From: Haliotis rufescens | Taxonomy: Eukaryota | Reading direction: 5' to 3' | Assembly (NCBI RefSeq): GCF_023055435.1 | Contig: NW_025963780.1 | Span: forward strand, 5,270,001-5,334,000 | Length of the DNA: 64,000 nt | In this document: positions 20,276-23,073 of the stretch, in pieces | How positions within the stretch are numbered: the stretch's first letter is position 1 | Layout: the number at the start of each line of letters is the position of its first letter | Notes under the pieces: model-generated | Database searches by the model: none | What the model saw: only the letters and a program-made list of their open reading frames with translations | Told to the model about the DNA's origin: nothing | Position numbers and translations under genes: made by a program

Positions 20276-23073
20276 CTAATCGCCGCTACCATCAGCCTCA
20301 CCACTTGTATTGTTCAGGCATTCGCTGCTTTCATTGTCAAGTGTCGTACAATCTGAAGGCACATCGGTTGCCAACTCTTTTGAACCTTCATATGAATCCG
20401 TTGTGTCGTCTCCTGCAGCCGCTGAATCCGCTGTGTAGTCTGCTGCAGTCGCTGAAACCGTTGTGTCGTCTGTTGCAGTTGCTGAATCCGTTGTGTCGTC
20501 TAAAGCAGTCGCTGAAACCGTTGTGTCGTCTGTTGCAGTTGCTGAATCCGCTGTGTCGTCTGCTGCTGTCGCTGAAACCGTTGTGTCGTCTGTTGCAGTT
20601 GCTGAATCCGTTGTGTCGTCTCCCGCAGTCGCTAAATCCGTTGTGTCGTCTGCTGCAGTCGCTGAAACCGTTGTGTCGTCTGCTGCAGTCGCTGAAACCG
20701 TTGTGTCGTCTGTTTCAGTCGCCGAATCCGTTGTGTCGTCTGAAGCAGTCGCTGAAACCGTTGTGTCGTCTCCTGCAGTCGCTGAATCCGTTGTGTCGTC
20801 TGCTGTAGTCGCTGAATCCGTTGTCTCGTCTGCTGTAGTCGCTGAATCCGTTGTGTCGTCTGATGCAGTCGCTGAATCCGTTGTGTCGTCTGCTGCAGTT
20901 GCTGAATCCGTTGTGTCGTCTGCTGCAGTCGCTGAAAACGTTGTGTCGTCTGCTGTAGTCGCTGAATCCGTTGTCTCGTCTGCTGTAATCGCTGAATCCG
21001 TTGTGTCGTCTGATGCAGTCGCTGAATCCGTTGTGTCGTCTGCTGCAGTTGCTGAATCCGTTGTGTCGTCTGCTGCAGTCGCTGAAAACGTTGTGTCGTC
21101 TGCTGCAGTCGCTAAATCCGTTGTGTCGTCTGCTTCAGTCGCTGAAACCGTTGTGTAGTCTGCTGCAGTTGCTGAATCCGTTGTGTCGTCTGCTGTAGTC
21201 GCCGAATCCGTTGTGTCGTGTGAAGCAGTCGCTGAAACCGTTGTGTCGTCTCCTGCAGTCGCTGAATCCGTTGTGTCGTCTGCTGCAGTCGCTGAAACCG
21301 TTGTGTCGTCTGCTGCAGTCGCTGAAACCGTTGTGTCGTCTGTTTCAGTCGCCGAATCCGTTGTGTCGTCTGAAGCAGTCGCTGAAACCGTTGTGTCGTC
21401 TCCTGCAGTCGCTGAATCCGTTGTGTCGTCTGCTGTAGTCGCTGAATCCGTTGTCTCGTCTGCTGTAGTCGCTGAATCCGTTGTGTCGTCTGATGCAGTC
21501 GCTGAATCCGTTGTGTCGTCTGCTGCAGTTGCTGAATCCGTTGTGTCGTCTGCTGCAGTCGCTGAAAACGTTGTGTCGTCTGCTGTAGTCGCTGAATCCG
21601 TTGTCTCGTCTGCTGTAATCGCTGAATCCGTTGTGTCGTCTGATGCAGTCGCTGAATCCGTTGTGTCGTCTGCTGCAGTTGCTGAATCCGTTGTGTCGTC
21701 TGCTGCAGTCGCTGAAAACGTTGTGTCGTCTGCTGCAGTCGCTAAATCCGTTGTGTCGTCTGCTTCAGTCGCTGAAACCGTTGTGTAGTCTGCTGCAGTT
21801 GCTGAATCCGTTGTGTCGTCTGCTGTAGTCGCCGAATCCGTTGTGTCGTGTGAAGCAGTCGCTGAAACCGTTGTGTCGTCTCCTGCAGTCGCTGAATCCG
21901 TTGTGTCGTCTGGTGTAGTCGCTGAATCCGTTGTGTCGTCTGCTGTAGTCGCTGAATCCGTTGTGTCGTCTGCTGTAGTCGCTGAATCCGTTGTGTCGTC
22001 TGCTGCAGTTGCTGAATCCGTTGTGTCGTCTGCTGCAGTCGCTGAAAACGTTGTGTCGTCTCCTGCAGTCGCTAAATCCGTTGTGTCGTCTGCTTCAGTC
22101 GCTGAAACTGTAGTGTCGTCTGCCGCAGTTGCTGAATCCGTTGTGTCGTCTGCTGTGGTCGCCGAATCCGTTGTGTCGTGTGAAGCAGTCGCCGAAACCG
22201 TTGTTTCGTCTGCTGTAGTCGCTGAATCCGTTGTGTCGTCTGCTGTAGTCACTGAATCCGTTGTGTCGTTTGCTGCAGTCGCTGAAATCGTTGTGTCGTC
22301 TGCTGCAGTTGCTGAATCCGTTGTGTCGTCTGCTGCAGTCGCTGAATCCGTTGTGTTGTCTGCTGCAGTCGCTGAAACCGTTATGTCGTCTGCAGCAGTC
22401 GCTGAATCGGTTGTGTCGTCTGCTGTAGTCGTTGAATATGTTGTGTCTTCTGCTGTAGTCGCTGAATCCATTGTGTCGTCTGCTTTAGTCGCTATATCCG
22501 TTGTGTTGTCTGATGCAGTCGCTGAATCTGTTGTGTCGTCTGCTGCAGTCGCTGAAACCGTTGTGTCATCTGCTGCAGTTGCTGAATCCGATGTGACGTC
22601 TGCTGTAGTCGCTGAATCCGTTGTGTCGTCTGCTGTAGTCGCTGAATCCGTTGTGTCGTCTGCTGTAGTGGCTGAATCCGTTGTTTCGTCTGCTATAGTC
22701 GCTGAATCCGTTGTGTCGTCTGCTGCAGTCGCTGAATCCGTAGTGTCGTCTACTGCAGTCGCTGAAACCGTTGTGTCGTCTGCTGCAGTTGCTGAATCCG
22801 TTGTGTCATCTGCTGCAGTCGCTGAATCCGTTGTGTCGTCTGCTGCAGTCGTTGAATCCGTTGTGTCGTCTGCTACCGTCGATGATTGGGTGGTATCGTC
22901 TTCTACCGTTGATGATTGGGTTGTATCGTCTGCTAACGTTGAGGGTTTGATTGTGTCGTCTGCTACCGTTGATGGTTGGGATGTGTCGTATGCAACCGAC
23001 GATGATTGGGTTGTATCGTCGCTTGACGCTGTTGAAGTTGTATAATCAGCAGCTGTTGAAAATTCTGCCTGAC
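20276..23073 (-). CDS. Gene 1 exon 2: 931-aa acidic Asp/Thr/Ala decapeptide-repeat region with C-terminal Cys pair (full protein about 1032-1038 aa)
   Basis: Acceptor atttatttattcacag|GT at 23074/23073 completes the phase-1 codon (G+GT=Gly) in frame with the 960-aa ORF; about 88 30-bp units with no indel or stop in this frame; unique C-terminus CTTLDNESSECLNNTSGEADGSGD*. Confidence 0.85.

What the first reader, a model, noticed from the sequence alone, without database searches (positions are those of the whole stretch)
20276..23073. About 930-residue polyanionic (DDTTDSATAA)n protein region, proline-poor and almost free of basic residues
Seen: about 88 decapeptides with consensus D-D-T-T-[DVF]-S-A-T-[AT]-A, only three Lys, no Arg and very few Pro in exon 2. 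The 30-bp register is kept without an indel over about 2.6 kb; stops arise only in other frames, whereas neighbouring non-coding minisatellites such as 1-452 and 53046-53935 do show indels. Known: Asp-rich repetitive proteins (aspein, asprich) control CaCO3 mineralisation in mollusc shells; classical mucin PTS domains are Pro-rich. Inference: a Ca2+-binding, O-glycosylated or phosphorylated matrix protein, possibly a regular beta-solenoid with Asp and Thr ladders.
Basis: partly seen in the sequence, partly recalled or inferred. Interest (0 to 1): 0.75.

Follow-up and report, generated by a model that had tools for sequence, protein, structure and literature searches.

The report
Acidic threonine-rich repeat exon, abalone gene
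The 2.8-kb repeat is very probably the real second exon of a secreted protein with a small PAN/Apple binding head and a very long, strongly acidic, threonine-rich tail, the expanded member of a local gene family; a role in shell formation is untested.

Summary
Minus-strand 23073..20276 is open for 931 codons: 87 decapeptides with consensus DDTTDSATAA, K3, R0, P4.

- Only 2 of 90 single changes to the consensus unit make a stop.
- Variants among units look neutral (11 synonymous, 29 not).
- Several non-coding minisatellites in the window also lack indels.

Coding is supported by context:
- An upstream exon (29522..29204) encodes a hydrophobic leader and a PAN_1 domain.
- Its phase-1 donor CAG|GTGGGT joins the phase-1 acceptor at 23074/23073 in frame.
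- Five tandem paralogs share that donor position and phase. Two have short Thr/Ser-rich second exons in phase 1.
- Contigs of one run cover the exon ends only. They break 5 nt inside the acceptor and end 13 nt after the only AATAAA.

Best reading: a secreted PAN-headed, polyanionic mucin-like protein of about 1038 aa, whose stalk grew by minisatellite amplification. Shell-matrix and Ca2+ roles are untested. A beta-solenoid is unsupported (pLDDT 40). Interest is moderate to low.

The parts
29204..29522 (-). Exon 1 of the gene: ATG at 29522, a hydrophobic leader (IVFFLVSLAGMF), then a PAN/Apple domain. It ends with 1 base of a codon (phase 1), and the donor CAG|GTGGGT has its GT at 29203-29202.
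   Evidence: Sequence read. ORF listed. Pfam PAN_1 at 27.9 bits (cut-off 21.4), E 2.1e-6. Four Cys are invariant among paralogs. All of the best Foldseek matches of the model are PAN/Apple modules, with weak E-values from 6.7e-3. The strongest hydrophobic 12-mer lies at residues 9-20.
23074..29203 (-). Intron 1, 6130 bp, GT..AG. It holds dispersed repeats, including a SINE-like element at 23202-23395.
   Evidence: Donor; acceptor ttatttattcacag|GT. 23202-23395 matches many places in the genome at 82-87% (2302 first-look candidates). The three runs guessed to be RNA have no depth in its unique bin 25000-25199, while the DNA run X11 has about 42.
20276..23073 (-). Coding part of exon 2: 2 bases completing a Gly codon, 931 codons, then stop TAG at 20278-20276.
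   Evidence: 319 + 2798 = 3117 nt = 1039 codons including the stop, so the two exons join in frame.
20411..23020 (-). 30-bp minisatellite of 87 units. Consensus GACGACACAACGGATTCAGCGACTGCAGCA encodes DDTTDSATAA. The 5 units at the 5' edge are degenerate.
   Evidence: TRF. Unit table. Consensus and variants. 48 distinct unit sequences of 87.
20651..21910 (-). Two adjacent, letter-identical 630-bp blocks (units 37-57 = 58-78): a recent 21-unit duplication or an assembly effect.
   Evidence: 0 mismatches of 630. Mean unit identity peaks at a lag of 21 units (0.922 against about 0.885).
20279..20410 (-). Unique C-terminal tail of 44 residues, ending SYEGSKELATDVPSDCTTLDNESSECLNNTSGEADGSGD. It has two Cys and three N-x-S/T sequons. 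There is no hydrophobic segment anywhere in exon 2.
   Evidence: maximum Kyte-Doolittle 19-mer 0.15.
19614..20275 (-). Probable 3' UTR of about 662 nt. Its AATAAA at 19632-19627 is the only one on this strand between 17355 and 25024. It contains a Tc1/mariner-like remnant at about 19760-20089.
   Evidence: The 808-letter contig of run X3 lies on 19614-20422 and ends 13 nt after the hexamer. The remnant matches other loci at 68-81%; the mariner label is my reading of the ORF, and Pfam gave no such hit.
23069..23070 (-). A second AG 5 nt inside the exon (..cacagGTCAG|GCAGAA). The fit of the X3 contig stops at 23068.
   Evidence: table 8, record 20: 287 letters, of which 1-199 lie on 22870-23068 and 88 do not fit. 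Sequence.

Best explanation
The array is the coding second exon of a two-exon gene on the minus strand. The exons are 29522..29204 and 23073..19614, separated by a 6.1-kb intron.

It has four parts:
- a hydrophobic leader;
- one PAN/Apple domain;
- about 870 residues of (DDTTDSATAA)n;
- a 44-residue tail with two Cys.

There is no membrane segment, so I read it as a secreted protein.

Shown here:
- the exon 2 open frame and the phase match of the two exons;
- the PAN domain;
- a tandem family of five PAN-head genes with the same phase-1 donor position, two of which have short Thr/Ser-rich second exons in the same phase;
- run contigs that respect the exon's 5' and 3' ends.

Inferred:
- The head binds a protein or carbohydrate partner, as PAN/Apple modules do.
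- The tail is an extended, disordered, densely O-glycosylated polyanion (net charge about -238 at pH 7). It would act as a mucin-like stalk or brush that holds water and divalent cations.
- The tail arose when a 30-bp piece of an ancestral short Thr/Ser-rich exon was amplified as a minisatellite. It still changes by unequal exchange (see the exact 630-bp duplication).
- Selection acts on reading frame and composition rather than on exact sequence.
For: 1. Gene structure. Exon 1 ends ..GTC GCA G|GTGGGT in phase 1. Exon 2 begins cacag|GT CAG GCA in phase 1 behind a pyrimidine-rich tract. The sum is 3117 nt, which is 1039 codons.

2. PAN domain. PAN_1 scores above Pfam's cut-off in 3 of 3 head exons of the window: 27.9, 27.3 and 22.9 bits against 21.4. 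All of the best fold matches are PAN/Apple modules.

3. Family.
- PAN exons lie at 29522, 49830 and 58079, and at 79230 and 87925 in window numbering beyond the window. All five are on the minus strand of one contig.
- All 5 of 5 have a GT donor after one extra base at the same alignment position.
- Gene 2 has a phase-1 acceptor (tttttatag|AC) opening a 74-aa Thr/Ser-rich exon, with a stop and an AATAAA 26 nt later.
- The gene at 79230 has a phase-1 acceptor opening a Thr/Ser/Pro-rich exon that ends C-x8-C-E-stop.

4. Origin of the unit. The best match of the 30-nt unit anywhere else in the window, on either strand and in any rotation, lies inside gene 2's second exon (21 of 30; two other places reach 20).

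5. Flanking frame. The open frame continues through 61 unique and 50 degenerate-unit codons beside the homogenised array. The chance of 54 open codons is 0.047 and of 104 is 0.0027, at the window's stop frequency of 0.055.

6. Run contigs.
- In X3, a related species, an 808-letter contig covers 19614-20422 and ends 13 nt after the only AATAAA.
- A 287-letter X3 contig fits 22870-23068 and then runs on unlike the intron.
- X1, X3 and X9 have zero depth in the unique non-exon bins 19400-19599 and 25000-25199. The DNA run X11 has about 40 there and runs straight through the acceptor (22847-23302).

7. Between species. The one indel listed inside the coding tail is 3 bp (at 20336, X3). The five listed in the 3' flank are 4, 4, 1, 9 and 2 bp.

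8. Uniqueness. The array is confined to this locus. The best other match in the genome is 46% identical.
Against: - Within the array there is no sign of purifying selection on residues. Of 40 distinct variants, 11 are synonymous and 29 are not, against 24:66 possible. Codon positions are hit 15, 11 and 14 times.
- An open array frame is expected by chance about 4 times in 10.
- Elsewhere in this genome a 30-bp minisatellite is open for more than 400 codons on both strands (L015).
- The X3 contig stops fitting at 23068, not 23073. If the strong donor at 29204 were joined to the AG at 23070-23069, the frame would stop after 7 codons. A weak phase-0 donor (ATG|GTCGCA) joined to that AG would again be in frame.
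- The tool only guesses that X1, X3 and X9 are RNA. Contigs show neither strand nor expression level. I could not see the 88 unfitted letters.
- No related full-length protein was found. The search with the whole exon 2 product gave one compositional hit (E 1.2e-4). Searches with the N-terminal and C-terminal pieces gave nothing. The profile-free search with exon 1 found only ORF-style calls that read through the donor.
- There are no proteomic or tissue data.
Confidence: 0.72

Rival explanations
1. The array is transcribed but not translated. The gene would make only a small PAN-head protein, for example through the AG at 23070-23069, which gives a stop after 7 codons. The minisatellite would then sit in the 3' UTR, open by chance.
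For: The X3 contig break is at 23068. The variant pattern in the array looks neutral, and the consensus codons are almost stop-proof (2 of 90 changes). Other minisatellites in this genome are open on both strands, and several have no indels.
Against: The frame is also open through 111 non-homogenised codons and ends 644 nt before the poly(A) signal. Two paralogs carry Thr/Ser-rich second exons in the same phase. Only 1 of 6 frames is open, and it is the one that fits the conserved phase-1 donor. The one indel listed between species in the tail is 3 bp.
Confidence: 0.13
2. One reading: a shell-matrix protein whose Asp and Thr ladders, in a regular beta-solenoid, bind Ca2+ and steer CaCO3 crystal growth.
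For: The exon 2 product is 26% Asp+Glu, with a net charge of about -238. Passages of the Haliotis laevigata shell proteome paper PMC6003135 list unnamed, very acidic, disordered repeat proteins. One is described as 'pI 3.9; IDP, A/S/T; repeats' with values near 10 in two columns of Table 1. I did not see the column headings.
Against: There is no tissue or shell evidence here. Asp is 24%, against up to 75% in aspein and asprich as quoted in PMC6003135. The words 'PAN' and 'apple' name no domain in that paper's main text. AlphaFold2 gave no confident fold (pLDDT 40.2). The paralogs' tails are ordinary Thr/Ser(/Pro) mucin-like stretches, not acidic.
Confidence: 0.12
3. A non-coding minisatellite that merely lies between repeats. 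Under this reading, the PAN exon upstream belongs to a gene that ends elsewhere.
For: Repeat remnants flank the array on both sides. No annotated protein was retrieved.
Against: The phase-matched splice sites, the poly(A) signal at the contig end, the exon-limited contigs and the paralogous two-exon architecture all count against it. No other Thr/Ser-rich open frame lies between exon 1 and the array.
Confidence: 0.03

Closest known systems
Mucin-like (PTS / tandem-repeat) domains encoded by a single large minisatellite exon, such as the variable-number repeat exons of vertebrate mucins (recalled, not from a call)
   Same: A leader, 43% Ser+Thr in short tandem repeats, one large repeat exon with a period that is a multiple of 3, growth by unequal exchange, and little constraint on exact sequence.
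   Different: Pro is 0.4% where PTS domains are Pro-rich. Asp is 24%, so the backbone itself is polyanionic. No VWD, C8, TIL, CK or SEA domains were found (no Pfam hit in exon 2). The head is a PAN domain.
Acidic shell-matrix proteins of molluscs (aspein, asprich, MSP-1; as cited in passages of PMC6003135)
   Same: Secreted, repetitive, probably disordered, very acidic and lineage-specific.
   Different: Asp is 24%, not up to 75%. Thr is the commonest residue. There is a PAN head. There is no evidence of shell or mantle origin, and no sequence similarity was found.
PAN/Apple-module proteins (HGF N domain, plasminogen, prekallikrein and factor XI apple domains, apicomplexan microneme lectins)
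   Same: Exon 1 matches Pfam PAN_1 above the cut-off. All of the best fold matches of its model are such modules, including the galactose-binding lectin SML-2 of Sarcocystis.
   Different: There is one small module with four conserved Cys, followed by a repeat tail rather than kringle, protease or further apple domains. Identity to the solved structures is 15-26%.
Yeast flocculin/adhesin architecture: a binding head on a Ser/Thr-rich stalk encoded by intragenic tandem repeats (recalled; PMC6308950 was seen only in a search listing)
   Same: The logic of a binding head plus a length-variable glycosylated repeat stalk. Paralogs differ mainly in the stalk.
   Different: Unrelated domains and organisms. 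No cell-wall or membrane anchor is seen here.

Membership tests
PAN/Apple domain proteins (Pfam PF00024) | Match to the PAN_1 profile above the curated cut-off | tested here: met
   27.9 bits against 21.4 for exon 1. The paralogs score 27.3 and 22.9.
PAN/Apple domain proteins (Pfam PF00024) | Conserved cysteine core and the PAN fold | tested here: met
   C59, C63, C70 and C82 are invariant in 6 of 6 aligned sequences. The model has pLDDT 78-85 over residues 51-90. All of the best Foldseek matches are PAN/Apple chains, with weak E-values from 6.7e-3.
Mucin-like (PTS) domain proteins | Tandem repeats with about 40% or more Ser+Thr (criterion recalled) | tested here: met
   T 30.9% + S 11.7% = 42.6% of 931 residues.
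Mucin-like (PTS) domain proteins | Pro-rich repeats (criterion recalled) | tested here: not met
   4 Pro in 931 residues.
Mucin-like (PTS) domain proteins | Secretion signal | tested here: inconclusive
   Hydrophobic stretch IVFFLVSLAGMF near the N-terminus. No signal-peptide predictor was available.
Mucin-like (PTS) domain proteins | Dense O-glycosylation | not testable with these tools
   Needs glycoproteomics or lectin/PAS staining of the native protein.
Gel-forming mucins | VWD/C8/TIL and cystine-knot domains | tested here: not met
   Exon 2 has no Pfam family at E up to 1. Exon 1 has only PAN_1 above the cut-off.
Asp-rich shell-matrix proteins (aspein/asprich type) | Asp as the dominant residue, in long D blocks | tested here: not met
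   D is 23.8%, never more than two in a row in the consensus unit, against up to 75% as quoted in PMC6003135.
Asp-rich shell-matrix proteins (aspein/asprich type) | Presence in shell extract or mantle-specific expression | not testable with these tools
   The runs are coded, with no library or tissue on record. The supplementary sequences of PMC6003135 were closed.
Beta-solenoid repeat proteins | A confidently predicted regular solenoid of stacked coils | tested here: inconclusive
   AlphaFold2 on 200 aa (20 units), single sequence: mean pLDDT 40.2, pTM 0.22, 191 of 200 residues below 50. Periodic 5-residue strands appear in the first 80 residues only.

The most novel reading that the evidence does not exclude
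The protein is a PAN-anchored, backbone-encoded polyanionic glycoprotein of the abalone shell or periostracal matrix. It could be the counterpart of the unnamed 'pI 3.9, A/S/T repeats' protein listed among the major proteins of the Haliotis laevigata shell matrix. In that case the 30-bp array length would tune mineral interaction, and the gene family would show a short mucin-like tail turning into a mineral-binding polymer by minisatellite amplification.
Probability: 0.12. Interest if true: 0.6.

Novelty: new member of a known kind. Interest (0 to 1): 0.36.

Why it matters
It gives a clean, datable example of a coding minisatellite taking over an exon. Among five neighbouring PAN-head genes, at least two keep short Thr/Ser-rich tails of roughly 50-75 residues. 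This one has about 870 residues built from one 30-bp unit, including a letter-perfect 630-bp duplication.

The product would be an unusual material: a Pro-free mucin-like chain whose negative charge is in the backbone rather than in sialic acid or sulfate.

Two practical points follow:
- None of the three protein-sequence searches returned this protein, so I could not confirm that it is annotated.
- With only three Lys and no Arg, the repeat region gives almost no tryptic peptides. Standard shell or mucus proteomics would see only the head and the last 33 residues.

If the shell link were shown, the gene would add a new class of acidic matrix protein. If not, it is one more lineage-specific secreted repeat protein.

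Tried and rejected
- Scans for a leader exon by ATG + hydrophobic stretch + GT, in phase 1 and phase 0, gave many candidates and no decision. A candidate at 31321 was dropped once the PAN exon at 29522 was recognised from the ORF list and Pfam.
- Protein searches with the whole exon 2 product, its N-terminal 69 aa and its C-terminal 66 aa found nothing usable. P0001 is a bacterial-looking Ser/Thr/Asp-rich repeat protein; I read the match as compositional.
- Pfam on exon 2 gave no family.
- The ESM Atlas gave two unnamed clusters at 0.81 and 0.79, below the level the tool treats as meaningful.
- The search of 1.84 billion representatives with exon 1 gave 14 hits. The three close ones (P0002, P0004, P0013) are ORF-style calls that read through the donors into the introns, so they say nothing about splicing. 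The rest are generic PAN proteins.
- Homology between gene 2's tail and the array is not established by tblastn (best E 8e-4, with composition statistics switched off). I rely on position, phase and the unit scan.
- Gene 3's second exon was not found. The only Thr/Ser-rich open frame downstream (54825-54733) follows an AG in phase 0, not phase 1.
- Papers. The search 'Haliotis' + 'PAN domain' returned one irrelevant paper. 'gastropod' + 'apple domain' + 'mucus' returned one irrelevant paper. Four peptide strings of the repeat returned none. So I found nothing in print on this protein in the searched library. Supplementary files, which hold the H. laevigata shell protein sequences, were closed.
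- The spliced protein was never joined.
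Full report
**1. What is there**

On the minus strand, 23073..20276 reads as 2 bases plus 931 codons and a TAG. Composition is T288, D222, A203, S109, V26, E19, then small numbers; K3, H3, R0, P4.

From 23020 down there are 87 in-register 30-nt units:
- five degenerate units at the 5' edge (DDTTQSSSVA, YDTSQPSTVA, ...);
- 82 close to the consensus GACGACACAACGGATTCAGCGACTGCAGCA, which encodes DDTTDSATAA.

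TRF gives 84.7 copies, 88% matches and 0% indels. Only this frame is free of stops over the array. The other five frames carry 3 to 94 stops.

**2. Does the array by itself show coding? No.**

- Of the 90 possible single-base changes to the consensus unit, only two (both in TCA) give a stop. With 40 distinct variants seen, no stop is expected about 41% of the time.
- The 40 variants split 11 synonymous to 29 non-synonymous, against 24:66 possible. They fall 15, 11 and 14 on codon positions 1, 2 and 3. That is a neutral-looking pattern.
- Absence of indels is not special. TRF also reports 0% indels for a 41-bp array of 41 copies (40487-42181) and for arrays at 16365-16920, 59303-59912 and 14832-15112.
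- Another 30-bp minisatellite elsewhere in this genome (L015) is open for 416 and 410 codons on its two strands.

**3. What shows that it is an exon**

*(a) An upstream exon that fits.* Listing long ORFs showed three similar minus-strand ORFs. Each has a hydrophobic start and a Cys pattern. Pfam places PAN_1 in all three above its cut-off (27.9, 27.3 and 22.9 bits against 21.4).
- The nearest one upstream of the array starts at 29522 and ends ..GTC GCA G|GTGGGT. This is a good donor after one base of a codon.
- The array ORF is entered at ttatttattcacag|GT CAG GCA.., an acceptor that supplies the other two bases.
- 319 + 2798 nt = 1039 codons, so the two exons join in frame across a 6130-bp intron.

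*(b) The family shares the architecture.*
- The genome has five such PAN exons. All are on the minus strand within about 60 kb of one contig.
- All five have a GT donor after one extra base at the same aligned position: G|GTGGGT, C|GTACGT, C|GTACGT, C|GTAAGT and C|GTGAGT.
- Gene 2 (exon 1 at 49830..49536) has, 10 kb downstream, a phase-1 acceptor (tttttatag|AC). It opens a 74-residue Thr/Ser-rich exon (..TPIDFTPSTSPTAATTSSTTDDTMASGNTAATG..NNDGGSS-stop), with AATAAA 26 nt after the stop.
- The gene at 79230 (window numbering, outside the window) has a phase-1 acceptor opening ..ASTPATTTPEATTSEETSTSPSTTT..CSEEGDSQGCE-stop.
- So two of the other four genes show the family plan: a PAN head and a Thr/Ser-rich tail in two exons. 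The exon under study is the hugely expanded, acidified tail.
- Gene 3's tail exon was not found.

*(c) The frame stays open outside the homogenised array.* It runs through 17 unique codons, 50 codons of degenerate units and 44 unique tail codons. At the window's stop frequency of 0.055 per codon, 54 open codons have chance 0.047 and 104 have chance 0.0027.

*(d) Origin of the unit.* Scanning the whole window outside the array, on both strands and in all 30 rotations, puts the best match of the unit inside gene 2's tail exon (21 of 30, at 39490-39460). Two unrelated places reach 20. This is suggestive rather than decisive, because the margin is one match and the exons share composition.

**4. 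Reads**

The look-up of sequencing runs listed no run on record as RNA. It listed ten small-share holders guessed to be RNA and one larger holder of unknown kind. I laid X1, X3, X9 and X11 on 19400-25399.

- **X11 is genomic DNA of another species.** It has depth of about 40 in the unique bins. One contig runs straight through the acceptor (22847-23302, 31 differences, no gap). Another runs through the poly(A) site.
- **X3 is about 93-97% identical over its two long contigs and behaves like RNA.**
  - It has no depth in 19400-19599, 23069-23199 or 24800-25199.
  - An 808-letter contig lies on 19614-20422. Its end is 13 nt past AATAAA at 19632-19627. That hexamer is the only one on the minus strand between 17355 and 25024.
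  - A 287-letter contig fits 22870-23068 with its first 199 letters. Its other 88 do not fit the intron.
- **X1** has contigs with 0 differences, so it is the window's species, and depth of 1-5 over the exon ends. **X9** has similar low depth. Both have none in the two clean non-exon bins. At such depth this is weaker evidence.

Together, the poly(A) signal and the AG place the transcript on the minus strand.

Caveats:
- The RNA label is the tool's guess.
- Contigs cannot show strand or expression level.
- The unfitted 88 letters were not shown.
- The fit ends at 23068, which is 5 nt inside the predicted exon and directly after a second AG (23070-23069).

Joining the strong donor (29204) to that second AG would shift the frame and stop after 7 codons. 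Joining the weak phase-0 donor ATG|GTCGCA (29211) to it would be in frame and would drop four residues. The paralogs' conserved phase-1 donor favours 29204|23073. I could not settle the point.

**5. Between species (effects read)**

- In X3 and X11 the stop TAG reads GGG. The next in-frame TAG is three codons on in the window's sequence, so the end moves by three residues at most.
- Of 13 other listed differences in exon 2, 5 are synonymous and 8 are not, and none makes a stop. The table was cut (154 differences not shown), so no rate can be given.
- The one indel listed in the coding tail is 3 bp. The five in the 3' flank are 4, 4, 1, 9 and 2 bp.

**6. The product**

- Exon 2 alone is 91 kDa, with net charge about -238 at pH 7. 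The calculated pI sits at the script's lower limit of 4.05. There is no hydrophobic segment, and there are six N-x-S/T sequons.
- AlphaFold2 on 20 units gave mean pLDDT 40.2 and pTM 0.22. This gives no support for a solenoid, though a single-sequence run is a weak test.
- The head model has pLDDT 78-85 over residues 51-90. All of its best PDB matches are PAN/Apple modules: the HGF N domain, the Sarcocystis galactose-binding lectin SML-2, plasminogen, TgMIC4 and prekallikrein. E-values are weak, from 6.7e-3.

**7. How it most likely works**

Shown: a two-exon gene for a leader, a PAN head, a polyanionic Thr-rich repeat and a short two-Cys tail, and evidence that it is transcribed in at least one related species.

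Inferred:
- The protein is secreted.
- The head binds a protein or sugar partner.
- The tail is an extended, O-glycosylated, cation-holding brush.
- The array grew from a short ancestral tail by minisatellite amplification and still changes by unequal exchange. Two adjacent 630-bp blocks are identical at 630 of 630 letters, and unit identity peaks at a lag of 21 units.
- The frame and composition, rather than the exact sequence, are what selection keeps.

**8. Compared with what is known**

- It works like a mucin-like repeat protein. It fails the Pro-rich criterion and has none of the domains of gel-forming mucins.
- It resembles acidic shell-matrix proteins in charge and repetitiveness. Asp is 24% rather than up to 75%, and there is no shell evidence.
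- I read passages of the H. laevigata shell proteome paper (PMC6003135). They list unnamed acidic, disordered repeat proteins, one described as 'pI 3.9; IDP, A/S/T; repeats'. This is a lead that I could not test, because the sequences are in supplementary files that were closed.
- I found no paper on a PAN-head repeat protein of abalone or gastropods, and none containing the repeat's peptide strings.

**9. Earlier notes of the scan**

- General notes on this genome call it red abalone. I used that only as a lead for paper searches and did not check it.
- After I had found the PAN family myself, a word search showed a first-reader note on this window titled 'Tandem family of three secreted PAN/apple-head + variable Thr-rich-tail genes with identical exon architecture'. 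My calls agree for genes 1 and 2, add two more genes beyond the window, and leave gene 3's tail unconfirmed.

**10. Verdict**

The region is a real coding exon (about 0.8). It belongs to a lineage-specific secreted PAN-headed, mucin-like polyanion. It is a new member of a known kind. The shell-matrix idea remains open at about 0.12. Interest is moderate to low. The gene is attractive mainly as a case of exon take-over by a minisatellite and as an unusual Pro-free acidic mucin-like sequence.

Noticed in passing
window 29204-29522, 49536-49830, 57773-58079; beyond the window at window-numbering 78946-79230 and 87626-87949 (G000:C2, about 5348946-5357949): Five tandem minus-strand genes. Each begins with a leader + PAN/Apple exon that ends in a phase-1 GT donor at the same aligned position.
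   Followed up: partly
window 39338-39564 (minus): Second exon of paralog 2: a phase-1 acceptor, 74 Thr/Ser-rich residues, TGA, and AATAAA at 39312-39307. It holds the window's best single-copy look-alike of the 30-bp unit (21 of 30).
   Followed up: yes
window 52923-53943 (ORFs 53360-54085 and 52896-53192, minus): A 24/48-bp minisatellite that reads (GDTYGVRY)n on the same strand as the PAN genes, between genes 3 and 2. The frame is broken by indels (3-5% in TRF). It could be a decayed or alternative repeat exon, or simply non-coding.
   Followed up: no
window 54733-54825 (minus): The only Thr/Ser-rich open frame downstream of paralog 3. It follows ttttatag in phase 0, which does not fit that gene's phase-1 donor, so gene 3's tail exon remains unidentified.
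   Followed up: partly
window 20276-20278: The stop codon TAG reads GGG in the related-species run X3 and in the DNA run X11. The next in-frame TAG in the window is three codons on.
   Followed up: partly
window 23202-23395, and bins 23400-23800, 24000-24400, 25200-25400: Highly repeated dispersed elements in the intron. The first matches 2302 first-look candidates in the genome at 82-87% identity. The bins reach summed depths in the millions in the DNA run.
   Followed up: no
window about 19760-20089: A remnant that looks like the C-terminal part of a Tc1/mariner transposase (my reading; no Pfam hit). It lies inside the probable 3' UTR. Other copies in the genome are 68-81% identical.
   Followed up: no
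window 40487-42181: A 41-bp minisatellite: 41 copies, 92% matches, 0% indels. It is a useful control showing that indel-free arrays need not be coding.
   Followed up: yes
L015 (G000:C223:575132-578500): A 30-bp minisatellite reading (GVEDTTLSIT)n on one strand and (VVSSTPVMLN)n on the other, open for 410 and 416 codons. It was the best non-self match to the repeat (46% identity).
   Followed up: partly
beyond the window, window-numbering 95334-97325, plus strand (G000:C2, about 5365334-5367325): A long open repeat reading (LSPPSSLPSDVET)n over 221 + 442 codons. Nature unknown.
   Followed up: no
   Followed up: no
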